From NCBI RefSeq assembly GCF_018977255.1, contig NW_024704751.1, positions 8,432,001-8,496,000 on the forward strand: a stretch of DNA of 64,000 bases, given 5' to 3'. A model generated the notes under the pieces. That model worked only from the letters and a program-made list of their open reading frames with translations. It made no database searches and was not told the origin of the DNA. The number at the start of each line of letters is the position of its first letter. The first letter of the stretch is position 1. Positions 10,779-24,410 of the stretch are shown here, piece by piece. Position numbers and translations under genes: made by a program. The stretch is from Callorhinchus milii (lineage: Eukaryota).

Positions 10779-11769
10779 CTTTCCGAAGCAAACGGATTGA
10801 GGCAGGAACACAAAAGAAGGAAAAACTCACTCCAGAGAGGTGAATACACCGAGGGTCTAGGGTGGGTGGAAAGAAAAGAAGAATTGTTCTGGTTTCTATA
10901 CAATTGATGATGCTACATTTCAGTTAACTTCGCACGATTCCTTGATTCACAAGGCATCGAATTGTACCTGCCATCTTTCAGGGGGAAAAAAATCCTCACC
11001 CATCAAAACCGAAGAGCAGATTTGGGTCATAACCATCCAGTTGATGTTCAAATACAAACTGCTACAGACTGCATTCAAACAAGCTGTAGAGTCATCTGTA
11101 AATCACACCACTGATATTCTCAAATCAAATGCCTCCTATCGTAGAACCAAGTATAAGAATTAATCTAATTTTCCAGCAAGCATAATTCAGCAAAGTTGAG
11201 AGAAAGGCAGATATTTACGATATCCTGCTCAGGTGCAGAATTCCAATTTACCATTCCCATTGATCCTCCATTACCAGGAATCCCATGGGATTGAACACAC
11301 AAAGACAATCACAGTAGTAATCCTTGCATTTGATATATATTAATATTATCCTTGCATTTATAACACCTTATTGTTTCTTTGAGAGAAGTGCTTCACATGA
11401 TTTTACTTTGAAGTGCAGTGTCTGTATTTGTAGATGTATTTGCGCACAACCCATCATGAAGTGAGAAACCAATTTTATTTAGGGTTCTTTTTTTTGGCCA
11501 GGACACCAGGAGACAGAAACTCACGTCTCTTTTCGAATAGAGCCATGGGATCTTTAACAGCTACCTAAACATCCAGATGGGACATCAGTTCCAATGTCTT
11601 ATCCAGCGCTTCCAACAAAAAAGCATACCCCCAGCAATCCATTGGTGTGTCAACCTGGACTGTGAGTTCAAAGTCCTGATGTATGGCTTGAACCCACAAC
11701 CTTCTGACTCAGAGGTGAGAGTACTAAAACTTGAGACAGGCTGACACCGAATCATACTGTTTAGCACAA

Positions 11770-13751
11770 TTAAATCTGAGCCCTGAACTGAGGCTCCAAC
11801 AGATAACCCCACATTGCATTATAGGGGTGAACAAGGATTGTTGGCTGATTCTTGCCATCAACCATCAACTTCCTCTCATTGGCCCATTTCACCAATCCCC
11901 CCTCCATATTATATACCTTCAATAGTCCTTGCAAGCTCTGGCCAGAATTGATGGCTAAATATTGATTGAGCTTTTGGGCCACTTTTGAGGAACGGTATCC
12001 CACGGTACAGTAGCAGACAAGGTCCTTGTTCTCTTTATTGTCTGAAACACAAAATAAAACCAGAATAAATCAAAGAGCAGACTGGGTGAGATGAATAAGC
12101 TACTATTTTAAATGCCTGTTGATTCTAAGAGGAAGGGAAGACAAGGGAAGGTGTGGAGTTCTGGGCTTGAAAGAACATTGGCAAATTGAAGATGGCGCTA
12201 TGAGTTTTGAACTCAACACAAGTGAGAACGCAGGACATAGGAACAGTGTGTAGGACGAAAAATTTAGAACTTAGATGGCACAAGAGAGGAAAGTTCATCG
12301 GAGTATTGACAATGACAATTGTCCTTACACTTGATCACTTTAAAACATTTTAAAGCACTTCACTGATTTTTCTGGAGTGACTGCAAATATAAAGCTTCAG
12401 TTAAACAGAGGAAGACAAGCAGTTACAACAGAGATAAAGAAGCAAGAACTATAATGGCTTTATTTGAGGATCCAGCTGATAGATTTTCCCCTTACTTAAC
12501 TACACTTTGCTTTCCTGGTAAATGCTTCACTAATATTCTATTTATTATGTTGTCTTATTCTCGACATGAATGATACAGCAACTAATAAAACAATCATATA
12601 ATGAATTAATACAATATAACACAATCTACCTGCCAGGTCCAGACTTTGGACCACTTCATCCATATTGACGGTGTCTGGATCAACGTGTACAGCGCCTTCT
12701 AGGTGACTGACCTCATATTCAGCTAAACTCCGAGTGTCCTGAAGAGAAAAAGGATGTTCAAAACTGTAAGTCCTTTGTCATTCCGGTGTCTTATTAGCTA
12801 ACAGAACATGACCGCCAGAAAAACGGAACGATTCCCATTCTCCCTGAAGAAGGTTCAATAGAAAGTTTCCTAATTCACATTCAAGAAGGAGCCACACATT
12901 CAATTAAACTCAATGGAACATTACTCACGGACACTGAACAGATCCCAGTTGAGCCAACTCGTGCTCAGCAGAGCAGTTCACATCACACATTCAAGAGAGA
13001 CTTTTTGAAGCAGAGCCCCAATTCTCAAATATTCAAGAGACGACCAGTCATTGTACAGATGTCAGACTCAGTTAGCTCAGTCGGCTCCGCCATTGCATCT
13101 CCCCTAAGGCTGCCGAGACCCTCATCCACGCATTCATCCCATCCAGGCTTCATTATGCTAGCTCCCTGCTTTCCAGTTCGTTCAGGTTCTCTGCAGATCC
13201 TTTGTTAGGAAGAAGGAGTATGTTTTCCAAGATATTTTGGGCAGTCCATGGTTTACTCTGATAAAGGTTTCAGAGAAAGATCTGTTGGAAAATTCCCAAA
13301 CTCTCAGCAGGTCCGTGCATAATTAACTAAGGTTGAAACCTTTCCGGGAAACCCAAAGTACAGGCTTTGTGTGAGTGTAATTGCTGGTCTATGCCGAAAT
13401 ATATCTAAGTCTATATATATCTATATATAAGTCCATGCAGTTAAGCAGTGCTTATTCTTACTAAATACTATTTTCAAATGTACATAATCCCTCCCTCACT
13501 AGTCTGAACATTTTAATACAGTTCTAAATTTACCAGAGTGGAGAAGCCTGTCTCAATGACGTGATAAGGTGCCATATCAAATGTAAGGATTATTATTATT
13601 GCTGTTGCATGGCAGTGCTGCCACAGTAAACGCTCACCAGCAGCACCAGCTGATCTCTCTCGGCCTCCAGCAAATCCCGAACCGTGTCGGTCGAAACTGC
13701 TTCCACCCCCTGAGAAGAGTGACGAACAAACGCGCTCACTTGTTTCAGCAT
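11770..13751 (-). CDS. Single-domain rhodanese-like (sulfurtransferase) protein A; 3 exons, 164 aa
   Basis: Exons 13751-13638, 12738-12630, 12041-11770 (GT-AG, phases 0 and 1, 495 nt). MLKQVSAFVRHSSQGVEAVSTDTVRDLLEAERDQLVLL/DTRSLAEYEVSHLEGAVHVDPD...DLVCYCTVGYRSSKVAQKL...VYNMEGGLVKWANERKLMVDGKNQPTILVHPYNAMWGYLLEPQFRAQI. Rhodanese hallmarks: LLDxR, EYxxSHLxGA, YCxxGxRS, YNLEGGxxxW. Confidence 0.88.
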
Positions 13752-13799
13752 AGTGAGCCCGAGGTGCTACCCGTTCATTCCGGACCAGGGTGGGCACGT

Positions 13800-14800
13800 A
13801 TCGTCAGCGAAATCCGCGAACCTGTTCAGAGGAGCGTGAGGGAGCTGCATTAACGCACGCACGCGCGCAAATCCGCACGCACGCACGCGTGTAAATCCAC
13901 ACGCACGCACGCGCGCACGCACGACCGGGCGCGCCGGTGAGTCAGGTGAGCCCTGACCGATCCCTCAGCTCGAGCTTTGCCGATCCGATCAGCCAGAAGA
14001 CAACCGTCGGCGCGCGGGACGCCGGCCGCCCTGCGCGACCGGCCGGCGCGCTTGGCCCGCGCGGTCTACAGCCGCCGGGGCTTTGCGGCGCAGTCCGCGG
14101 AGCGGCTCAGAGGCGTCTCGGAGACGTGATGACGACGATACCGACAACGACGACGACCGCAATAATAATAAAAAAAGCCCCTCATCGCGTCTCCGAGACG
14201 TCTCCCGAGCGCTTCGCGGGATACGCCGTGAAGCGAATTGACTGCGTACTTTGGTGCTGATGTCAAAAACAAGGATTATTATTGTTTATTGTGATTATTA
14301 TGATTATTAGTGTTGGGTCTGGGTGGGGGGGGGGGGGGGGGAGTGGGGGGAGGGGGGGGGCGCTGCAGGACCTGCCGCCGCTCCGCCAGTCCAGGGGGCG
14401 CTGTGGCGGCAGAGAGACGCTCGCCTTGAGCGGCGCGCGCATCCCTTCCCCAACCAGTTGTCGGTTGGTGGTGGCGGCGGCGCGAGCGCCCGCGCGGCGG
14501 TGGAGTCGTCCCGGTTAAGACGCGGTACATATCTAAAAAAAAACGCTTCCTCACGCGAGTGAGTGAGTGAGTGAGCGAACGAACGGACGGCGCCGTCGTC
14601 GTCTTACTCGTGTGGAACGGCCGCGGTGAGTGACGGAGGCGCGCGATGGCCGCTGCCGTCAACACCGTCGAAACAGGTACTGAGCGGGCGACGGCCGGAA
14701 GTGGGGCCGCAGCGGGGGGCGGAAGTGGGGCAGCAGCCGCCGCAGCGCGGGGCGGAAGTGGGGCAGCAGCCGCAGCAGCGGGGCGGAAGTGGGGCAGTTG
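13800..14800. promoter_or_regulatory. CpG island / bidirectional promoter between rhodanese A and MED31
   Basis: Very CpG-rich, between divergent ATGs at 13751 (-) and 14646 (+). Confidence 0.75.
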
Positions 14801-17800
14801 GGGTGACAGCTGGCCAGTGAGGAGAACTGGGTCTGTGGGTAACCCCGTTGTTGTTATTTTAATGATAGCCACATAATCAGCAGCAAGTCTTGCTCTTCGC
14901 CCCCTTCAAGGTGCTGAGTCACCCGACAGTCACCGGCCACCCTGTGGTGCTCAGGAGCTTCTGGAACTCTCTCCCTCCCTCGATCCCTCCGCCTTGACCC
15001 CTCGATCCCTCCGCCTTGACCCCTCGCTCCCCACTTTCAAATCCCGCTGAAAGGTCTTCCTTTTTGATCCATGCTTGCGGCCGCCCTCTTCCCTTTTCCC
15101 CTGGTCAGTGTCTTGACTCCGCCAGCGTCAAGCGCTACGGGACGCCACCCGGCGTGAAGGGCGCGCTATGTAAACGCAAGTTGTTGTGGTGGAGCCTGAG
15201 CCCAGCCTGATTTTCCCTGATTCCCTATCTCAAGCCGGGCATCCTGGCTAAGTTAATGCTACAGTAAAACTTGCAAAAGTCTTACCTTCATCAACCGTAT
15301 AATCGCCCAAGTCGGACATACACCCAAGTCCTGTTCAGTTTCTTTTCGAAACCACTTAGATTTCTTTGCTCTACTCGTATTTATCATTTAACATGTAACA
15401 CCGCTCCCCTATCCTCCATTACTCCCGCACTTACCAATTATATTGACAGACCACAGTCACTGTGAAGCATGTTCATGCAGGAACCCGGAGGATCTTTCTT
15501 TACTGTGTTGTTTATGAAACCTAAGAACATTTTTCATTGATCCTGTTTGACAGGAATTAGGATTGCTAGTCCTGCTTCTCATGTGTCCTGTCCATGTCAA
15601 GGTATCATGGCTTTGATTAGATCATACTACGTGATTGGTTTGTGTCGTTAATGCACCCACATGGGCCTTTAGAGTATTACTCAGTATTGGAATGTGAAGC
15701 ATATAGAAAATGAGCAAATTAAATCTTTTTTTTCCTTCTGTTTAGAGGAGCAGTCAAAGCTGCGTTTCCAGGTAGAATTGGAGTTTGTTCAGTGTCTGGC
15801 AAATCCAAACTACTTGAACTGTAAGTACTGCTTGCATTATAATAATAATGATAATAATGATAATAATACTTGCATTTGAGATAGCGCTTTTCACGTCTTC
15901 GAGATGTCTCAAAGCGCTTCACAGAATATACTGTAAAGTGAATTGACTGTACATTTGTGGGCGAAATGCAGCAGCCAATTGCGCACAGCAGTGTCCCCAC
16001 AAACAGTCATGGATTGAAATGACCAATTTATTATTGTGTTTTTTTTTGGAGAGATTATTATTAGGCGTATGGAGTAAGGAAACTTGCCCAAGGTTTCACC
16101 CTGCCGGGAATCAAACCCAGGTCTCTCGCTTGCAAAGCAAGTGCTCTAACCACTGAGCTACAGGACTCCTCAAAGCATTAAGCTATGGTTAGGGGTTAAA
16201 ATCTTCAGCTGCTGAAGTCTATTGCAGTCTTCCCGAGGCTTCAGATAGATCGCATTGTTTACTTACCAGACAGTGAGTAACACATGTAGCATAAAGTCTT
16301 CCAATACCAGCCCCTGAGATTGTCAGTTTAATTTTGGCCAGATTTTCAGTTGGGCCACTAAGGGCTTGGGATGAGAACGCCCAAATTCATTTCACATAAG
16401 CAGGCAGCAGAGGAAGGAGACTTTCAGCCCAGATCCTGCAGGTGAAAGGTCAGTGTGCTCACCAGCTGTAACAATCACTGAGGATCTTCAGGAAATGAGA
16501 AATCAGAACAATCAAACAAAACAATCATCATAATTTTACTGCTGCCTGAACAGTCAGGGTCAATTTGCTCTATTATTAACAATATTGTAAGCCACTTAAA
16601 TAGTGGCTTAATAAGCCACGAAACCGAGATCCCATCCTAGTCAAAAGCCAGAGGCACTACTTAATTCATCTTTATCTTAATTGCCCCCAAAATATATCTC
16701 AGACCAAGGGAGCTTGAATGAACAATTGTGTACTTCAAAGTATCATCTATCTCCTTTATCATCTGTCTGCACATTACAGTACAATAGAGTATATTTCCTT
16801 TGTGAACCCTGCTTTAGTATAATTTGTACATTGCACAATTCTCACGTTACCACGCCTGTGTTAGAAAAGGCCCCATCTTCATTGCTGTGTTTACATTCTT
16901 TAAAAAGGAACACATTGTCCCAATATATTCTCCTGAGACAAGCAAACCAAACACTAACTGCTTTGTAGTTGCGACAGCTGCAGGCTGCAGTTCACTGGAG
17001 GTTTCAGGAAAGTCACAGCAGAAGCTGACTAGGCTAGAAAAACAAACTGAGCGCTTCCATGTAAAGAGTAAATCTGGGTCCTGCATTCCACTACTGAAGT
17101 AAAAGCAGTAACACACTTAATACTGATGGTTCAAATCTGGAAATCGTGCAGTCACTGAATTTCTATTGGTGCAGTCAGTGTTCTCGCACTTATATGACAA
17201 TGTAATTTACACTTACACAGCCCCATTCACGTCGTGAAGATGTCTCAAGCCACTTCACAGTGCTGGCTGGACATCTGAGCTGGGGGTGGGGAGGGGAAAG
17301 ATGACCGAAAGCGTGGTCAAAGACAAGTCTTGAAGCGGTCTTTGAGCATGGGGAGGGACGGGACTGGGACATGTAGCAAGCCAGTATTCACTGAGTGAGA
17401 GGCTGAAGGAGGTGCCAGAGGCAGGGTGAGGAGAGTCCATGGAGGGATTTTAAAGTAACAAGGATCTTGAAGTTGATCAGTAGAAATGCATGACGGTGAG
17501 GCAGCAGAAACACAACACTCGTGCTTTGCCTGCGGTTCGATGGTGTTTGCGGTGTTCACCCTCGTATCTGCACTTACATTGTTTATTTCTCCATCCACCA
17601 GTTCTGGCTCAGCGCGGATTCTTCAGGGACAAGACCTTTGTGAATTATCTCAAGTACCTGCTCTACTGGAAGGAACCAGAATATGCCAAGTACTTGAAGT
17701 AAGCACACGGGTCCTAATCCCTCACTGTTCAGCGCCTTGGGACGTCCTCCCGACGTGAAAGGCGCTTTACAGATGTAATTTTGTATGGTATTGTGTATTT

Positions 17801-18111
17801 CCCCACCCAACTGGACTGCTAGATGGTGGGGTGGGTGGGGGGGGTGTATTGGAGACTGTGACTGATTGAATACACTTAACTCTCTGGTCCTCCTCCCTCT
17901 ATCTCTCTCTGGCTGTAGGTATCCCCAGTGCCTGCACATGCTGGAGTTGCTACAGTACGAGCACTTCCGGAAGGAGCTGGTGAACGCCCAGTGCGCCAAG
18001 TTCATTGACGAGCAGCAGCTGCTGCACTGGCAGCATTACTCCAGGAAGCGAATGAGGCTGCAGCAAGCCCTGGCTGAGCAGCAGCAGCAGAACAATGCGT
18101 CCAGCAAGTGA
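14646..18111 (+). CDS. MED31: Mediator complex subunit 31; 4 exons, 131 aa
   Basis: Exons 14646-14676, 15746-15820, 17602-17698, 17919-18111 (396 nt). Peptides RFQVELEFVQCLANPNYLNFLAQRG, NYLKYLLYWKEPEYAKYLKYPQCLHMLELLQYEHFRKELVNAQCAKFIDEQQLLHWQHYSRKRMRL. AATAAA at ~19051. Confidence 0.97.
14695..14796 (+). promoter_or_regulatory. Four tandem ETS/GABP-like CGGAAGTG motifs at the start of MED31 intron 1
   Basis: cggaagtgggg occurs four times within a ~30 bp GC-rich unit. Confidence 0.5.
15840..16169 (-). mobile_element. tRNA-derived SINE, near full length
   Basis: Reverse complement of the 4175-4492 element: head at ~16090-16169, (AAT)n tail at ~15840. Confidence 0.8.
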
Positions 18112-19346
18112 GGGCTCAGAGGCTGGCGGTAGAGAAGCTCAGAAGATGGACAGATAGAATGATGATGATGGGGTTGGAGTTTAACAGACAGTGTGTGAAA
18201 CACTGCCACCATATAGAGCACCGATATTATTAACTGGACAAAGCTTTGGGGAACTCTCCAGCCATTTGTACTTAAGAAAGGACCAATAGAACTGTTGTAA
18301 GAGGAGTTTTGCTCCTGTGGGAGCGAGCGACTGAAGGGCTTGAATTGGTGTTGACCTCTCCCCTCTCTTCCTCCTCCTCCTCCCGTCTTGTGTCGGATGA
18401 AAATGTCCTGAAGTTGCTCAGGGGCAGCAGAGACTATCGTCAGGAATGCAGCAAAGTTCACAGAAGTCATGGGAATAAATCCTGACCAAGCGGACAAGAT
18501 TTGGGACTGGCCCCTGGAGAGCCATGTGTCCCTGAAGTTCCATTTGGTCCATTTGTTTGTGGGGGTAAAACTGTTGTAGTGAGCAATAAGCCTACTAAAA
18601 TAACATCACAGTTGTTTATTACACATGACAGCCTGTGAAAATGATTTTCTCTCTTTGTGTTGGTGATTGTCAACTTGTGGTCGTCACCAAAGGGCAAGGT
18701 TGAGAGTGATATTTACTGGGTTAAAGAAGTTTGCGTTTCTAGAACCGTCGAGTTTACAGCCAGAATCCGGCCATTCGTGTCTGTGGTGGCTCTATGAATG
18801 AGCGATCCATTCAGACCCATTTACTTGCCTTTCCCCAAACTGTTCTAATCTGCTTTTTTTATGGAGAAGAGCTAAGAGAATTGGGTTAAATGGATTGCAA
18901 GCTCGGGTACAGTGGGCCAAATGACCTCCAGGTCTGTAAATTTCTATGCTTTGTTTATTATACTATGGTTATCTCTCGTGCATGATTGAATCGGTGCCTT
19001 GGGACGTACTCCTGAAGCGAAAGGCGGTGCATTGTTGTTGAATCTTTATAAATAAACCAATTGACTTCTGAAGTCACTGGGTCATACTGCGGTATCGGGA
19101 CCTGCTACACTCTTGAGAGGTGTCTGGCCTAATATGAGGTTGGTGTGCAAGCTGATGGTTGATAGAGACGGGAACTCTCTGTCAATTCCAGATTCTCTGA
19201 GCCTCTGCTGAGGGACATTACATTTTTGAAACGTCAGAATACAACACCAATCTGTCTGTAGACTATTACTTGTTAGATTGCACATCCTCCCGACTACTGA
19301 CGTAAAGCACCCTCCTGTCCGCACACACTGGTTAGCTAGAGCAAGA

Positions 19347-19455
19347 GTTAGAGACCGAGTAAAGCTCCCTCTATACTGTCCGTCCACACGCCCAGGTCAG
19401 GGTTAGAGACAAGAGTAAAGTTCCCTCTACACTGTCCGTCCACACTCCCGGGTCA
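19347..19455. repeat. ~55-bp minisatellite (gttagagacN..agtaaagctccctctacactgt..cacactcccaggtca), 2 units plus a third at ~19545
   Basis: Direct repeat with period 55. The same unit recurs at 56565-56693. Confidence 0.75.
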
Positions 19456-19703
19456 CCGACAGTCTGGGTTAGGTACAATGACAACAATAACAAATTGCAT
19501 TTATATAGCACCTTTCATGTCTGGAGGACTTCTCGAGGCAGTGGTACAGAGAAAAGCTCCCTCTACACTGTGCACCCAGGACTCCCAGGTCAAGTACGCA
19601 TCTTACTTCTCCCCAAGAATATTTCTCTGGGGAAGATATGCAATAGTATGTTACATCCAGCGAGTGGCAGTGCACTCCTTCCAGTTTAACTGATCCATTT
19701 AAT

Positions 19704-20010
19704 GACACAAAGCAGAGGAGGCTGAGCACAAAGTCCTGTAGCAGTTTGTTCACGGTCACGTGCAGTTTACGCTTCCAATCCAACTGTAATAACCGGTCTG
19801 ACTGCAGAACAGGCAGCAGTTTTCAGGCTGAAACCTTGTCGTCCGGGGCCTCGAGTCTTGGCCATGCTGAAGCCCGTGAGCGAGTGGATTAAGCACAGTT
19901 TCCAGACGGTGGAGAATGTGTCTTCGGACTCGCTGGAGCAGCTGCTGAAGGAGGACAGGGATCGGGTGGTGCTGGTGGTGAGTCAGGCACACGCTGGGCA
20001 GGAGCAACAA
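19704..20010 (+). repeat. Inverted repeat, arm 1 (arm 2 at ~24107-24410), containing exon 1 of rhodanese B
   Basis: Reverse complement of ~24107-24410. The 114-nt coding exon is identical in both arms. Confidence 0.93.
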
Positions 20011-21712
20011 CAAGTTACATTTGTATAGTGCCTTTCACGTCGTGCAGGAGCAGCTCAGCCAGAGAGACGCTCCTCTGACAGCCCGAGGCTCAGATAGAAA
20101 GGAAAAGATCAGACTGAAGGGAGCAATGTGGAAGCAATCCATAGCAAATCTGCAGGACACATGAGGTTAGGACCTAACACCGAGAGACAGCCACCCCAAT
20201 GACGAGCAACTGGAATAGAGACTTGTGCTCGATTAACATTAAAACCTCCAATGTTCAGAACTGCTTGGAGACCACCCTCACACAGCCACCTCCCCCCCCC
20301 ACCTCCCGATGCCTGGGCACACTTGTGTTTTGCACCAACTTGTCCGTGTTAATGTGTTCTTGGGCACAGCTTCACTGAGCTGTGCTTGAATGGGGATTGA
20401 CACACTGAGCACCGGTGAATGTCAATAGGCATTAAACCCTGACCTGTGGGACTCTGGTGCATTGACCACAGTGACTTATGTGAGACAGCACAGATCCGTC
20501 AGACCCTGAGTAAATAGTTACCGATCAACTGAGGCCTGCTGGTTGCGTTGAATTGAGCCTTATTCTCAGTGTGGCTTATTCAAACAAAACAAACTTTTAT
20601 TTTAGGACGTACGGAGCCCTGGCGAGTTCGAGGTCAGTCACTTACAAGGAGCTGTTCGTGTTGAACCAGACAACACTGCCATGGACAGCGTGATCCAGCA
20701 ATTGGACTTGGGGCTGGCAGGTACAGAGCATTTAGATGTGTTTCTATCAGTTGTCGGGTCTATCTCCATGGTTAACCAGCGTACACACAGTATCTGACAC
20801 ACAGACCACAAACAGCCCAAACTCCAGCAAAACCCTGGTTGGGTTTTCGGTTAACTTTCTGACTCTGAAATAAAAACGATCGATTTGAAACAAACGATCT
20901 ATTGTACGGAATCATTTAGTTTAGTTTGCCACAACGATAGTAATAATAATACTTACATTTGATATAGCACCTTATCACGTCTTCGAGACGTCTCAAAGGG
21001 CTTCACAGAATATACCATAAAGTGAATTGACTGTATATTTTGTGGCCGAAATGTAGCAGCCAATTGCACACAGCACAATTGGCCACAAAAACAGTCGTGG
21101 ATTGAGTGATGAAATTACTATTTTTTTGGGAAGGGATTATTACCCCCAGAAAAGTGAGCCTCCAATCGACTTAACAACCAGGTTCCTACTTGCTACTGGG
21201 TAAACAGAGGTGTGTGTGTGTGGAGCATGGAAATTTGCCTAAGGTTTCGCCCTGCCGGGGAATCGAACCCAGGTCCTCTCGCTTGCGAGGAGAGTGCTCT
21301 AACCACTTTGCTGCGGGTCTCCACATATATTTCCTTAAAACGACTATTCGGGTTGCAGGTGGTCAGTGACAGAGTGTTCCGCGGGTGGCGACCTCCTACT
21401 GTGATCTGCCCCGCGTGGTTGTTCTGGTTTTGTTCTTCAGGTGGTGAGGAACTGAGAGAGATCATCTGCTACTGCACCACTGGCTATCAGGCTGCACATC
21501 TGGCTCAGAACCTCAACACCTTTTTGGAAAGTGAATGCGGTCGAGGCTTGCGTGGACAGCTGAAAGTTTCTAACCTGGAAGGCGGGTTCCTGAAATGGAC
21601 CAGAGAGAACAGGGCTATAGTGGACAGCAGCAACCAGCCCACGACCTTGGTTCACCCCTATAATGAGCTGTGGGTAGAGCTGCTAAAGGCTGAATTTAAG
21701 GCTCCTGTCTAA
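19864..21712 (+). CDS. Single-domain rhodanese-like protein B; 3 exons, 166 aa
   Basis: Exons 19864-19977, 20606-20720, 21441-21712 (501 nt). MLKPVSEWIKHSFQTVENVSSDSLEQLLKEDRDRVVLV/DVRSPGEFEVSHLQGAVRVEPD...EIICYCTTGYQAAHLAQNL...VSNLEGGFLKWTRENRAIVDSSNQPTTLVHPYNELWVELLKAEFKAPV. Confidence 0.87.
20938..21322 (-). mobile_element. Full-length tRNA-derived SINE (~380 bp) in intron 2 of rhodanese B
   Basis: tRNA-like head at ~21240-21322 (ggaatcgaacccagg...ctctaaccact), central body and (AAT)n tail. Confidence 0.8.
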
Positions 21713-23151
21713 CCCCGGGAGCGGAACGAGAATAACATGTGTTTATACCGAGCCCATCATGTAACTTTCAGCGACTCAAAGCGCTTTATAATATAATTGA
21801 TTCAAAATGAAGTGAAATTAATTCTACAGGCAAACACAGCTGCTAACCTGTCGATCACAAACCGCGATGAAGTGAATGGTTATTTTTTTTTCTGGGGGAA
21901 TTGTTGGCCACGACTTTGGGAGAGAGAAAAACTCCCTTCTCTTTTCAAGTAGTGTTGCGGGATCTTTAGCGTCCACCTGAACAGGCAGACTGGACTTCGG
22001 TTAACTGCAGTGTTCCGCCTCAGCACCTCACCAGAGTGTCAGCCTGGACTTTGAGTTCATAATCCCACAACTTTGCTTTCTGATTACAAAAAGAAACATG
22101 CCACAAGATAAATCAGATAGCTAAGTGCTGATTTACTGTCATAAAAGACCGAGCACATAAATGACTATTAACAGCCTATGATAGATCGCATTGACATTGA
22201 TTAATCAAACTTAAGTCTGTTTGCCAACGATCAATTTAAGTCTCTGAGACACATGGAGAGTTCACCTGTCTCCACGACAGAATAGGTCAATGCTCTTGTT
22301 AACCTGATCTGCATTGTTGAGTATGGTGATGGTGGAATATTGTAGCCTCTTTGTAAACCAAGGTCAGTTTAACTCATTCTGACATGAGCTGTAGGAACAC
22401 ACCCAGCGATCCGGTCTGCCCGACTTTGCAGATCTTTATAGTTTATAGAGAGATTTATCTCTTGTGTTATTGAGAAACAAGGTGAAATGTGAGGGTCTGT
22501 GGAGCAGTACACCACCAAGGTTGAAATGAGTAGCAGGGAAAAACAAGTCTTACAAAGACCTACATATACTTTGCAGTATATTCTGTGATGTGGTTTGAGA
22601 CTTCCTTTGGACTTGAAAGAGCGCTATATCCAATTGCAAGGACTGTTGTTATTTTGCAATGAGTTTTGAGTCCTTGAAAGGTTCGTGCCTCATCTGATGT
22701 CATTCTGCATTTGCTAACACACAATCCACTGTGGTGAGAGAACTGAGAATATTTGTGTTTATTTTGATTATTGCAAACATCATTGACTGAGGTCAGTGCA
22801 GCTGCACTGTTTGAACGCACTCTAAACACAGTATCTGAGAACGATTGCGCACACGAAGTTAGGAACAATATCTCACCACAACCGGCCATCAGGAATATTG
22901 TAAGAGGAACAGCAATGACTCACTACAGAGGAGTAAATACACCAATCTCACGAAAACATCCATCCCCTGAGGGTGCGGAGTGCAGGGGAGGCAGTAACCT
23001 TAGCCAGTAGCCATTGCCCCTTTTCACTAACACTCTGACTAAACTGCTGCAAACCAGTAATGCTGTGGCTCGTTGGTGCTGTTGATCTTGATCTCCAGTG
23101 GTTCAGAAATCCAGCCTGGCAGCTCCTGAACATTTTCATTCAGCAGAACAA

Positions 23152-24252
23152 TCAGAAAGAGGCCCTGAGCTCGGGCTCTAACAGCTGGCCCCACACCTGG
23201 TTATAAGGGTGGACCAGGGCGGTGGGTTTATTCCTGCCGTCAACGATCTCCTTCCTCTCGTTGGCCCATTTCACCAAGCCGCCCTCCAGGTTGTACACCC
23301 TCGGCAAGACCTCCTCGTGCCGGCCAGAACCATTGGCGAGAAAGCCGCTGAGTTTCTGAGCCATCTGCGAGCCGTGGTACCCGACTGTACAGTAACACAC
23401 CACCGTTTTATTCTCCTTCTGAACGTCTGAAAACACAAACAGGCAACAAACAGTCCAAGTCAGACTCCTGGGCCTTTGGTGACCCGGTCAGCTGTTCCGC
23501 CAGTAAATCACAGCAATCGACAAGTCCCTACCTGGCAGGCCCAGCTGCTGGACCACATTGTCCATGTTGCTGGCGTCCGGGTCGACCCGAACGGCTCCTT
23601 CTATGTGACTGACCTCGTACTCCGCCTGACTCCGAGCGTCCTGAGATGGAAAGGGGGAAAGTTACCAACTTTGGTGTGTTCAGGACAGTGTTGTACAGCA
23701 TCACTCACTCCCTGCCCCAGGAGTGCTGAGGTCAGGCATAAACCCTGCACTGAGGGGCAGTGCTTCAACTAACAGTAGAACTCCATGGCCAGAAGTGGAG
23801 AGTGGATCCCATCCCACGCAGTAGATCCAAGGCCAGGGAGCTTCCCAAATGCCCCTGCAAATTGTCCCAAGTGCGAATGGCTCCCTTCATGCCTCGCGCC
23901 AGCCTAGTTCCAATTAAGCCCATCAAATGAGCAGATTCCAACACGCCTTTGGTCACTCTCCTACCTCTACCCTCCCTGCTCTCCACCCTTTTCCTGATCC
24001 CCCCCACCGCCCACCCCCCCAGCTTGATCCTCGATTGTCCAGCGCCTTGGGACGTCCTCCCGAAGTGAAAAGACGCTGCGTAAATATAATTTGTTGTTAT
24101 TGTCGTCGTTGCTCCTGCCCAGCGTGTGCCTGACTCACCACCAGCACCACCCGATCCCTGTCCTCCTTCAGCAGCTGCTCCAGCGAGTCCGAAGACACAT
24201 TCTCCACCGTCTGGAAACTGTGCTTAATCCACTCGCTCACGGGCTTCAGCAT
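23152..24252 (-). CDS. Single-domain rhodanese-like protein C; 3 exons, 165 aa
   Basis: Exons 24252-24139, 23640-23532, 23426-23152 (498 nt). Exon 1 is identical to gene B, then DARSQAEYEVSHIEGAVRVDPD...TVVCYCTVGYHGSQMAQKL...VYNLEGGLVKWANERKEIVDGRNKPTALVHPYNQVWGQLLEPELRASF. Confidence 0.88.
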
Positions 24253-24410
24253 GGCCAAGACTCGAGGCCCCGGACGACAAGGTTTCAGCCTGAAAACTGC
24301 TGCCCGTCCTGCAGTCAGACCGGTTATCGCAGTCGGATTGGAAGCGTAAACTGCACGTGACCGTGAGCGAACTGCTACAGGACTTTGTGCTCAGCCTCTG
24401 CTCTGTGCCA
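24107..24410 (-). repeat. Inverted repeat, arm 2, containing exon 1 of rhodanese C
   Basis: Reverse complement of ~19704-20010. Confidence 0.93.

What the first reader, a model, noticed from the sequence alone, without database searches (positions are those of the whole stretch)
11770..24252. Cluster of three intact single-domain rhodanese genes of a type not recognisable as a mammalian sulfurtransferase
Seen: three paralogs (164-166 aa) with the same 3-exon structure, open frames, canonical splice sites and a catalytic-position Cys, arranged around MED31. All carry a C-terminal extension, consensus KWxxExxxxVDxxNxPTxLVHPYNxxWxxLL. Knowledge: this does not match what I recall of TST/MPST, TSTD1/2/3, MOCS3 or CDC25. 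I recall a similar WANE...VHPY..WG.LL tail from standalone bacterial rhodaneses, but this is unverified. Inference: an uncharacterised animal sulfurtransferase family, either ancient and lost in mammals or acquired horizontally long ago and intronised, and expanded here. Cyanide, sulfide, persulfide or arsenic chemistry are candidate roles.
Basis: partly seen in the sequence, partly recalled or inferred. Interest (0 to 1): 0.82.

Follow-up and report, generated by a model that had tools for sequence, protein, structure and literature searches.

The report
Ancient rhodanese gene trio beside MED31
Three intact copies of a little-studied sulfur-transfer enzyme gene sit around MED31 in the elephant shark. 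The family runs from corals to platypus, was not found in other mammals, and I found no study of what it does.

Summary
The window matches Callorhinchus milii database proteins. It holds three intact three-exon genes around MED31: A (-, 164 codons), B (+, 166) and C (-, 165), all with GT-AG introns. Each encodes one rhodanese domain with a Cys at the start of a six-residue loop, plus an N-terminal helix and a 35-residue C-terminal tail.

Spliced contigs from two studies show both introns of B and intron 2 of C exactly as modelled.

The proteins are already in public databases under automatic names only. Five literature searches found no paper on the family.

The family is old and vertically inherited. 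It occurs in corals, molluscs, annelids, echinoderms, cartilaginous fishes, coelacanth, amphibians, reptiles, ratite birds and platypus. No therian, teleost or neognath appeared among the listed hits. Bacterial relatives (NCBIfam NF045521) share the helix and tail. Horizontal transfer is not supported.

A, B and C are ancient paralogues: the B and C clades each contain chimaera and elasmobranch genes. A keeps the family's loop-end Arg. C has His (11 of 11). B has His, Tyr or Gln (8 of 8).

My best reading is that A is a thiosulfate/persulfide sulfurtransferase, and that B and C keep the Cys but use a different sulfur donor. This is untested.

The scan's two other notes on rhodanese describe this same stretch, not other DNA.

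The parts
13638..13751 (-). Gene A, exon 1 (ATG at 13751; 38 codons; N-terminal helix)
   Evidence: Matches residues 1-38 of P0015 at 100%.
12630..12738 (-). Gene A, exon 2 (36 codons plus 1 nt; first half of the rhodanese domain)
   Evidence: AG acceptor and GT donor.
11770..12041 (-). Gene A, exon 3 with stop TAA (active-site loop, end of the domain, tail)
11992..12009 (-). Gene A active-site loop, CTVGYR (the family's usual form)
11773..11877 (-). Gene A, 35-residue C-terminal tail beyond the Pfam rhodanese match
   Evidence: Pfam match ends at exon-3 residue 54; NF045521 covers the tail.
19864..19977 (+). Gene B, exon 1 (identical in 114 of 114 nt to exon 1 of C)
   Evidence: RNA joint 19976>20605 (cut +1) in 3 of 4 runs.
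20606..20720 (+). Gene B, exon 2 (38 codons plus 1 nt)
   Evidence: RNA joints on both sides.
21441..21712 (+). Gene B, exon 3 with stop TAA
   Evidence: RNA joint 20717>21438 (cut +3) in 4 of 4 runs.
21473..21490 (+). Gene B active-site loop, CTTGYQ (loop-end Arg replaced)
21605..21709 (+). Gene B, C-terminal tail
24139..24252 (-). Gene C, exon 1 (ATG at 24252)
   Evidence: A contig piece lies on 24138-24326 in run X3.
23532..23640 (-). Gene C, exon 2
23152..23426 (-). Gene C, exon 3 with stop TGA
   Evidence: RNA joint 23426>23532 (skips 105 nt; CT..AC on the + strand) in 4 of 4 runs.
23374..23391 (-). Gene C active-site loop, CTVGYH (loop-end Arg replaced by His)
23155..23259 (-). Gene C, C-terminal tail
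19718..20011 (+). Arm 1 of the 294-nt, 97% inverted repeat: proximal upstream region, exon 1 and 34 nt of intron 1 of B
24105..24398 (-). Arm 2 of the inverted repeat: the same parts of C

Best explanation
These are three expressed, ancient paralogues of one distinct subfamily of single-domain rhodanese. The subfamily has an N-terminal helix, a rhodanese core with a catalytic-type Cys in a six-residue loop, and a conserved 35-residue C-terminal tail. It is shared by bacteria and many animals, was inherited vertically in Metazoa, and was not found in therian mammals.

What is shown: the gene structures; splicing of B and C; family membership; the phylogenetic spread; the age of the paralogues; and the fixed differences in the loop.

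What is inferred: A keeps the loop C-T-V-G-Y-R found across the whole family. It most likely works like other single-domain sulfurtransferases, by a ping-pong mechanism. The loop Cys takes a sulfane sulfur from thiosulfate or a persulfide, forming Cys-SSH, and passes it to a thiol or other acceptor. B and C keep the Cys and every other family-conserved position, but they replaced the loop-end Arg (by Gln in B and His in C) and the next residue (Ser to Ala in B, Ser to Gly in C). They probably still carry persulfide sulfur, but with a different donor or acceptor preference and poor use of thiosulfate.

The tail and the N-terminal helix are structural parts of the domain. Their role (a partner or substrate site) is unknown.
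For: **Gene models.**

**Public proteins equal to the models.**
- P0008 is named Callorhinchus milii and equals C except for one missing Glu.
- P0018 equals B except for one residue.
- P0015 is a C. milii isoform and equals A up to a donor inside exon 3.

**Splicing.** Contigs of 4 runs from 2 studies carry the junctions:
- B exon 1-2 in 3 of 4 runs.
- B exon 2-3 in 4 of 4 runs.
- C exon 2-3 in 4 of 4 runs.

**Family.**
- Pfam Rhodanese matches.
- NF045521 is the best NCBIfam family for 6 of 6 exon translations and 3 of 3 full proteins, and its alignment covers the tail.

**Fold.** The AlphaFold2 model of the A-type orthologue P0001 has pLDDT 95.3 and pTM 0.90. The helix and tail have block means of 94-98. 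It is a rhodanese fold with Z up to 14.7, and 51 chains score Z >= 8.

**Spread.** Named hits come from cartilaginous fishes, coelacanth, a caecilian, a newt, turtles, a crocodile, three palaeognath birds, squamates, platypus, molluscs, a brachiopod, corals, a lobster, a nemertean, an annelid, echinoderms and a foraminifer. In bacteria, 595 of 600 candidate stretches were confirmed.

**Tree of the exon-3 part** (68 rows, 89 columns), support as ultrafast bootstrap/SH-aLRT:
- Vertebrates 99/95.
- Invertebrates 97/90.
- Bacteria outside.
- B clade 99/88 (8 rows).
- C clade 99/96 (11 rows).
- B+C together 98/89.

**Loop-end residue**:
- Arg in 15 of 15 A-type, 17 of 17 sarcopterygian, 9 of 9 invertebrate and 8 of 8 bacterial rows.
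- His in 11 of 11 C rows.
- His 6, Tyr 1 and Gln 1 in the 8 B rows.
- The Cys is kept in all 68 rows.

**Role of the loop.** The six-residue loop starting with Cys defines rhodaneses. In yeast RDL2 the loop-end Arg is needed to form the persulfide from thiosulfate (passages of PMC8533005).
Against: - No activity was measured for any member of the subfamily, here or in any paper I could find.
- B and C lack the loop-end Arg/Thr/Ser that PMC8533005 reports as critical. They might not be sulfurtransferases at all.
- The family was not found in therians, teleosts or neognath birds. The platypus copy sits on a long branch (1.14) and has HPG in place of HPY. So the function is dispensable in many vertebrates.
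- Bacterial neighbours are glycosyltransferases, DUF547 and a thioesterase, and the ESM Atlas shows a fatty-acid-hydroxylase fusion. None of these is a sulfur-metabolism gene.
- The tool only guesses that the four runs are RNA. Their spliced joints argue for RNA, but whether the joined forms also exist as DNA was not reported (table 5b).
- Expression of A was not checked with reads.
- The C exon 1-2 joint was not among the 15 joints shown; 11 more were hidden.
- The structure model is of the Heptranchias orthologue, not the window's protein. Its coordinates were not returned, so I could not measure whether the tail touches the active site.
Confidence: 0.7

Rival explanations
1. B and C (or all three) are non-catalytic rhodanese-like modules. 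They would act as binding or regulatory proteins, as inactive rhodanese domains do in some phosphatases and ubiquitin hydrolases.
For: The loop-end Arg is lost in 19 of 19 B and C rows, and the next residue changes from Ser to Ala or Gly. B evolves fastest: the median exon-3 identity of the window's copy to its elasmobranch orthologues is 45%, against 66% for A.
Against: The loop Cys, the loop length and all other family-conserved positions (D38, R40, E44, S48, Y84, G88, N118, G121, W126, H145, P146) are kept in the B and C clades. Inactive rhodanese domains usually lack the Cys (recalled, not tested here). E. coli GlpE is active with a loop that does not end in Arg (recalled).
Confidence: 0.15
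2. The genes entered a cartilaginous-fish ancestor from bacteria by horizontal transfer and later gained introns.
For: The closest curated family is bacterial (NF045521). Bacterial proteins share the helix and tail and are 39-45% identical to P0001.
Against: The family is present in cnidarians, lophotrochozoans, an arthropod, echinoderms and many vertebrate classes. Animals form one clade and vertebrates another (99/95), with sarcopterygians branching in species-tree order and bacteria outside.
Confidence: 0.02
3. They are arsenate reductases or phosphatases of the Cdc25/ACR2 type.
For: The best structural match is the Leishmania As/Sb reductase 2j6p (Z 14.7, rmsd 1.9, 121 residues aligned). 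Cdc25A and Cdc25B score Z 13.1 and 12.5, and Ygr203w scores 13.7.
Against: Seven further structures (ranks 2-8), sulfurtransferases among them, lie within 1.6 Z of the top match, so the fold does not tell the classes apart. The loop is C-X4-R with six residues, not the seven-residue CX5R of Cdc25/ACR2 (the rule is recalled).
Confidence: 0.05
4. They are tRNA uridine(34) hydroxylases (TrhO/TSTD2-like) or MOCS3-like enzymes, as the automatic NCBI names say.
For: NCBI names include 'tRNA uridine(34) hydroxylase-like' and 'MOCS3-like'. There are weak NCBIfam matches to TrhO and to MoeB/MoeZ. TrhO structures align over model residues 1-163 at Z 11.2 and 10.5.
Against: The scores are far below the curated cut-offs: TrhO 35.6, 41.4 and 32.3 bits against 170; MoeB/MoeZ at most 34.1 bits against 449-647. 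Proteins of 164-166 residues have no room for the N-terminal TrhO domain or for an E1-like adenylation domain.
Confidence: 0.03

Closest known systems
NCBIfam NF045521 'rhoda_near_glyco' (bacterial rhodanese-homology subfamily with no assigned function)
   Same: It is the best-scoring curated family. The alignment runs from the N-terminal helix region through the loop to the tail (P0008 residues 14-157 on profile positions 15-138 of 144). The loop YC(S/T)VGYRS, the NLEG(S/G) and W.NE motifs and the HPY motif are shared.
   Different: The shark proteins score 90-100 bits, below the 145-bit cut-off. Animal proteins carry an insert of about 10-20 residues between the helix after the loop and the next strand. 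By eye, 10 of 18 bacterial representatives have an N-terminal hydrophobic segment that the shark proteins lack.
Characterised single-domain sulfurtransferases: E. coli GlpE, yeast RDL1/RDL2, human TSTD1
   Same: All have one rhodanese domain with a six-residue loop starting with Cys. The loop-end Arg of A matches that of RDL2. Structural Z is 11-12 (1gn0 12.0, 6bev 11.2, 3d1p 11.1).
   Different: Sequence similarity is weak. Only RDL1 (3d1p) is hit, at 2.5e-6 over query residues 12-98. TSTD1 and GlpE are not hit at E <= 0.01. None of them aligns with the model beyond residue 139, so none covers the rest of the tail.
Rhodanese domain of TrhO / UPF0176 (the TSTD2 family)
   Same: This is the second-best NCBIfam match for P0001 and P0008, and third for P0011. 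The solved structures span model residues 1-163.
   Different: The scores are 32-41 bits against a cut-off of 170. There is no N-terminal TrhO domain.
Cdc25 phosphatases and ACR2 arsenate reductases
   Same: They give the top structural scores (2j6p Z 14.7). Cdc25B and Ygr203w align as far as model residues 161-163.
   Different: Their loop has seven residues (CX5R; recalled), against six here. Sequence identity is 12-16%.
Rhodanese-like domain of MOCS3/Uba4
   Same: Structural Z is 13.4 (3i2v) and 12.7 (6yub). There are weak NCBIfam matches.
   Different: There is no adenylyltransferase domain, and the scores are far below the cut-offs.

Membership tests
Rhodanese homology domain (Pfam PF00581) | Profile match above the gathering score | tested here: met
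   The exon-3 translations score 26.0, 23.1 and 25.9 bits against 22.2. PF00581 is precomputed for 15 of 15 hits.
Rhodanese homology domain (Pfam PF00581) | Alpha/beta rhodanese fold | tested here: met
   The AF2 model of orthologue P0001 has pLDDT 95.3. 51 solved chains score Z >= 8, and all 50 listed entries are rhodanese-type. The window's own proteins were not modelled.
Catalytic (sulfurtransferase-type) rhodanese | Cys at the start of a six-residue active-site loop | tested here: met
   The loops are CTVGYR, CTTGYQ and CTVGYH. The Cys is kept in 68 of 68 aligned rows. The definition comes from passages of PMC8533005.
Catalytic (sulfurtransferase-type) rhodanese | Loop-end Arg, Thr or Ser: gene A | tested here: met
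   Arg in A and in 15 of 15 A-type rows.
Catalytic (sulfurtransferase-type) rhodanese | Loop-end Arg, Thr or Ser: genes B and C | tested here: not met
   The window's B has Gln and C has His. His in 11 of 11 C rows; His 6, Tyr 1 and Gln 1 in the 8 B rows.
Catalytic (sulfurtransferase-type) rhodanese | Sulfur-transfer activity through a Cys persulfide | not testable with these tools
   This needs an enzyme assay.
NCBIfam NF045521 rhoda_near_glyco | Whole-protein score at or above the curated cut-off of 145 bits | tested here: not met
   100.4, 96.0 and 90.1 bits for P0001, P0008 and P0011.
NCBIfam NF045521 rhoda_near_glyco | Match covers the region before the core and the C-terminal tail | tested here: met
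   P0008 residues 14-157 align to profile positions 15-138 of 144. Exon 3 alone reaches profile position 138-139.
TrhO / UPF0176 (TSTD2) | Score at or above 170 bits (NF001133), plus an N-terminal TrhO domain | tested here: not met
   35.6, 41.4 and 32.3 bits. Proteins of 164-166 residues hold a single domain.
MOCS3 / MoeB / MoeZ | E1-like adenylyltransferase domain; cut-offs 449-647 bits | tested here: not met
   At most 34.1 bits. The Pfam scan of the exon translations found no second domain.
Cdc25 / ACR2 | Seven-residue CX5R loop | tested here: not met
   The loop is C-X4-R/H/Q. The CX5R rule is recalled, not read here.
TST / MPST | Two tandem rhodanese domains | tested here: not met
   There is one domain in 164-166 residues. 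PMC8533005 calls TST 'tandem-domain type'.
TSTD1 / GlpE type | Significant sequence match to a characterised member | tested here: not met
   The PDB sequence search at E <= 0.01 gave 3 hits: yeast YOR285W, a Francisella protein and TrhO. TSTD1 and GlpE were not among them.
Allochromatium vinosum Alvin_2599 (Rhd_2599) | Orthology to the named protein | not tested
   The name 'Alvin_2599-like' is an automatic NCBI label.

The most novel reading that the evidence does not exclude
The trio is a division of labour inside one persulfide relay. A, with the Arg loop, loads sulfane sulfur from thiosulfate. B and C, with the His/Gln loops, act as dedicated carriers or acceptors. The family-specific tail and N-terminal helix form the docking surface. 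If so, this would be a vertebrate sulfur-trafficking system with no counterpart in human, mouse or zebrafish. It would have been kept for over 400 million years in cartilaginous fishes, while gene conversion keeps the 5' halves of B and C alike and selection keeps their active-site halves apart.
Probability: 0.12. Interest if true: 0.65.

Novelty: new member of a known kind. Interest (0 to 1): 0.4.

Why it matters
Work on vertebrate sulfurtransferases rests on the human and mouse set: TST, MPST, TSTD1-3 and MOCS3. This is a further conserved lineage. It occurs in sharks, reptiles, ratite birds, platypus and many invertebrates, but did not appear in therians or teleosts in my searches. That may be why I found no study of it.

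It offers a natural experiment on the rhodanese active-site loop. Arg is kept in every lineage sampled except two old paralogue clades, where His is fixed or predominates.

It also shows mosaic concerted evolution between neighbouring genes.

It does not change any established picture, and its function is unknown.

Tried and rejected
**Bacterial gene neighbourhoods.** I called ORFs myself in 80 loci and clustered them.
- No partner is universal.
- A PMT_2 glycosyltransferase is nearby in 16 of 80 loci, all Verrucomicrobiota.
- GT2 is nearby in 14 of 80 loci, 10 of them Cyanobacteriota.
- DUF547 is nearby in 13 of 80 loci, across three phyla plus one unassigned locus.
- A thioesterase is nearby in 14 of 80 loci.
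- One cyanobacterial locus read in full (L003) has none of these next to the gene.
- This fits the NCBIfam nickname but gives no mechanism, and I do not carry it over to animals.

**Solved structures.** By sequence there are 3 weak hits, none covering the tail. Foldseek gives generic rhodaneses with TMq at most 0.61. VIA-align wide gives many tied rhodanese folds. No solved relative shows the tail.

**Tail geometry.** No model coordinates are returned (one search checked the files on hand). I could not measure the distance from the tail to the Cys.

**Synteny in other vertebrates, and Pfam-annotated bacterial neighbours.** Whether the gene sits beside MED31 in other species was not tested.

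**dN/dS.** I did not compute it. No coding DNA of the orthologues was available, and the window's paralogues are too old for a meaningful dS.

**Literature.** The searches were Alvin_2599, rhodanese with elephant shark, rhodanese with TSTD and phylogeny terms, rhodanese with DUF547 (0 papers), and rhodanese with gene-loss terms. For all of these I saw search listings only, and none deals with this family. Of PMC8533005 I saw 12 passages, including the abstract. I asked for no supplementary files.

**Tree rows.** I used 65 named or clearly bacterial proteins plus 3 window rows. I left out:
- unnamed metagenome and Logan proteins;
- fragments (P0016, P0017, P0021, P0210);
- a second Hemitrygon isoform (P0028);
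- P0012 and P0204;
- the gecko record flagged UNVERIFIED_CONTAM (P0022).

I assigned the A/B/C labels by eye from the N-terminus and loop before building the tree. The two or three loop columns are among the 89 columns used.

Full report
**Observation.** I read the exons from the sequence and checked them one by one.
- A (- strand): 13751..13638, 12738..12630, 12041..11773, stop ending at 11770; 164 codons.
- B (+ strand): 19864..19977, 20606..20720, 21441..21709, stop ending at 21712; 166 codons.
- C (- strand): 24252..24139, 23640..23532, 23426..23155, stop ending at 23152; 165 codons.

All 6 of 6 introns are GT..AG, in phases 0 and 1, at the same positions in the three genes. A tblastn search of seven family proteins against the whole window found only these nine exons. 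MED31 lies between A and B on the + strand; three ORFs match Pfam Med31. The layout is A (-), then MED31 (+), then B (+), then C (-).

**Source genome and public models.** I searched the exons separately and never joined them.
- Exon 3 of A found 15 proteins, all from cartilaginous fishes.
- P0008, named Callorhinchus milii, equals C except for one missing Glu.
- P0015, a C. milii 'isoform X2', equals A through exons 1 and 2 and into exon 3. It then uses a donor inside exon 3 and ends in nine residues encoded at 10856..10830.
- P0018, from the representative library, equals B except for one residue.

So the window is elephant shark, and all three spliced models already exist as predicted proteins. 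Their names are automatic and disagree with each other: 'sulfurtransferase Alvin_2599-like', 'tRNA uridine(34) hydroxylase-like', 'GlpE-like', 'MOCS3-like', 'uncharacterized'.

**Transcripts.** I laid contigs from four runs of two studies on 19700-24400. The tool only guesses that these runs are RNA.
- B exon 1-2: joint 19976>20605, readable one place to the right, in 3 of 4 runs.
- B exon 2-3: joint 20717>21438, readable three places to the right, in 4 of 4 runs.
- C exon 2-3: joint 23426>23532 in 4 of 4 runs.

All three joints sit on my predicted exon borders. The C exon 1-2 joint was not among the 15 joints shown (11 were hidden). One contig piece ends at 24138 beside the exon-1 border, and one contig has 25 unplaced letters ahead of exon 2.

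Both differences between the window and the public proteins appear in these contigs. T>C at 21648 (Leu to Ser in B) is in 4 of 4 runs. A 3-nt deletion at 23310 (one Glu fewer in C) is in 1 of 4 runs.

**What the proteins are.**
- Pfam finds the rhodanese domain on exons 2 and 3, and nothing on exon 1 or on the last 35 residues.
- The best curated family is the bacterial NCBIfam NF045521. Its profile aligns from before the core to position 138 of 144, which includes the tail. The scores are 90-100 bits against a cut-off of 145.
- An AlphaFold2 model of the A-type orthologue P0001, built from 150 aligned sequences, has pLDDT 95.3 and pTM 0.90. The N-terminal helix and the tail are as confident as the core.
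- Fold searches return only generic rhodanese and Cdc25 folds. The Foldseek TM-score on the query is at most 0.61. By VIA-align, seven further structures lie within 1.6 Z of the top hit, the Leishmania reductase at 14.7.
- No solved structure matched by sequence covers the tail.

**Distribution and descent.** Searching exon 3 of A against 1.84 billion representatives gave 1527 proteins at E <= 0.001 and 130 at E <= 1e-10.

Names recovered for a sample place the family in the following groups:
- many sharks, rays and the chimaera;
- coelacanth, a caecilian and a newt;
- turtles, a crocodile, squamates;
- emu, tinamou and ostrich;
- platypus;
- molluscs, a brachiopod, corals, a lobster, a nemertean, an annelid, a brittle star and sea urchins;
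- a foraminifer.

No therian, teleost or neognath bird is among the best 120 of 347 profile hits. A search with the platypus protein gave 13 hits among 141 candidates. The best hit besides platypus itself is a turtle at 51% identity, and there is no other mammal. These are searches of predicted proteins, so an unannotated gene or a relic would be missed.

In bacteria, 595 of 600 candidate stretches were confirmed. They come mostly from Verrucomicrobiota, Cyanobacteriota, Rhodothermota and Gemmatimonadota.

A maximum-likelihood tree of the exon-3 part (68 rows, 89 columns) puts bacteria outside. Invertebrates form one group (97/90) and vertebrates another (99/95). Sarcopterygians branch in species order. 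This is vertical descent, not horizontal transfer into sharks.

**The three paralogues.**
- The window's B falls in a clade with seven elasmobranch genes (99/88).
- The window's C falls in a clade with ten elasmobranch genes (99/96).
- B and C together form a clade (98/89).
- A-type genes are unresolved at the base, beside the single-copy sarcopterygian genes.

So both duplications predate the chimaera-elasmobranch split, and A is the counterpart of the tetrapod gene.

The loop-end residue is Arg in 49 of 49 rows outside B and C. It is His in 11 of 11 C rows, and His, Tyr or Gln in the 8 B rows. The next residue is Ser in all 15 A-type rows (and in most rows outside B and C), Ala in B (8 of 8) and Gly in C (11 of 11). 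The Cys and the other family-conserved positions are kept throughout.

The median exon-3 identity of the window's copies to their elasmobranch orthologues is 66% for A, 60% for C and 45% for B. All three copies are clearly conserved, and B has changed most.

**Mechanism (inferred).** Passages of PMC8533005 state that a six-residue loop starting with Cys is the signature of rhodaneses. They also state that catalysis is ping-pong through a Cys persulfide, and that the loop-end Arg of yeast RDL2 is needed to take sulfur from thiosulfate.

On that basis, A is most likely an ordinary thiosulfate/persulfide sulfurtransferase. B and C keep the nucleophile but have changed the residue that handles thiosulfate. 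I expect them to carry persulfide sulfur with a different donor or acceptor.

The six-residue loop argues against Cdc25/ACR2-type chemistry (the seven-residue rule is recalled). The short length and the low scores argue against TrhO and MOCS3. The role of the tail is open.

**Bacterial context.** Neighbours differ by phylum:
- PMT_2 glycosyltransferase in 16 of 32 Verrucomicrobiota loci;
- GT2 in 10 of 17 cyanobacterial loci;
- DUF547 in 13 loci across three phyla plus one unassigned locus.

The ESM Atlas lists a cluster of fatty-acid hydroxylase fused to rhodanese, whose model aligns over the whole of C's Atlas model (TM 0.80). These point towards envelope or lipid chemistry rather than sulfur metabolism. 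I treat them as leads only.

**Novelty.** This is a known fold and a known kind of enzyme. The bacterial branch has a curated but unnamed profile, and the animal proteins sit in databases as predictions. Five literature searches found no paper on this subfamily. I rate it a new member of a known kind, of moderate interest.

**Limits.**
- No assay was done.
- No model coordinates were available.
- No codon-level selection test was possible.
- The tree has few columns.
- Absence in therians, teleosts and neognaths rests on protein databases only.

Noticed in passing
window 19718-20011 and 24105-24398: B and C are convergent genes whose proximal upstream region, exon 1 and first 34 intron bases form a 294-nt inverted repeat at 97% identity. 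Exon 1 is identical in 114 of 114 nt, and one run of 194 nt has no difference. Exon 2 is only 73% alike. I read this as gene conversion of the 5' end between paralogues that are otherwise very old.
   Followed up: yes
proteins P0180/P0187, P0010/P0198, P0011/P0185 and others (no window coordinates): Within elasmobranch species, the B and C proteins are 89-99% identical in the part matching exons 1-2 but only 47-56% identical in the exon-3 part: Hemitrygon 66 of 74, Heterodontus 72 of 74, Pristis 73 of 74. In Scyliorhinus the 36 residues matching exon 2 are identical in the A, B and C proteins. This is either recurrent conversion or shared 5' exons. I could not read the genomic loci.
   Followed up: partly
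window 21648 and 23310: The assembly differs from the transcripts in two places. T>C at 21648 (Leu to Ser just before the HPY motif of B) is in 4 of 4 runs and in P0018. A 3-nt deletion at 23310 (one Glu fewer in C) is in 1 of 4 runs and in P0008.
   Followed up: partly
window 13752-14645: The ATG of A (13751, - strand) and the likely ATG of MED31 (14646, + strand; the ORF begins MAAAVNTVET) are head to head and 895 nt apart. The stretch between them has 64% G+C and CpG observed/expected of 1.36. It looks like a shared bidirectional CpG-island promoter.
   Followed up: partly
window 16096-16167 (-), 21276-21325, 20956-21426: ARAGORN calls a tRNA-Ala-like sequence inside a MED31 intron. Part of it recurs at 80% identity in intron 2 of B (family D8). 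That part of B's intron has summed contig depths up to about 160,000 in the runs. This is probably a tRNA-derived SINE family that is abundant in transcripts.
   Followed up: no
window 10830-10856 and 11917: The public 'isoform X2' of A (P0015, 125 aa) leaves exon 3 at an internal GT after ...GLLK and ends in nine residues encoded at 10856..10830. It would lack the last strand of the domain and the whole tail. I did not check it with reads.
   Followed up: no
protein P0211 (platypus): The only mammalian member found sits on a long branch (1.14). It has HPG in place of the family's HPY, and Ala in place of Leu at family position 154. It may be decaying.
   Followed up: partly
window 22330-22644: A contig continuous with B exon 3 reaches 22581. 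A contig continuous with C exon 3 reaches down to 22644. Another contig covers 22330-23122. The 3' ends of the convergent genes may abut or overlap. Contigs carry no strand, so this is open. The only AATAAA on C's strand in that stretch is at 22758-22763.
   Followed up: no
bacterial proteins in alignment A1; loci L001-L080: By eye, 10 of 18 bacterial representatives begin with a hydrophobic segment (a signal peptide or membrane anchor) ahead of the conserved helix. The shark proteins start directly at that helix.
   Followed up: no
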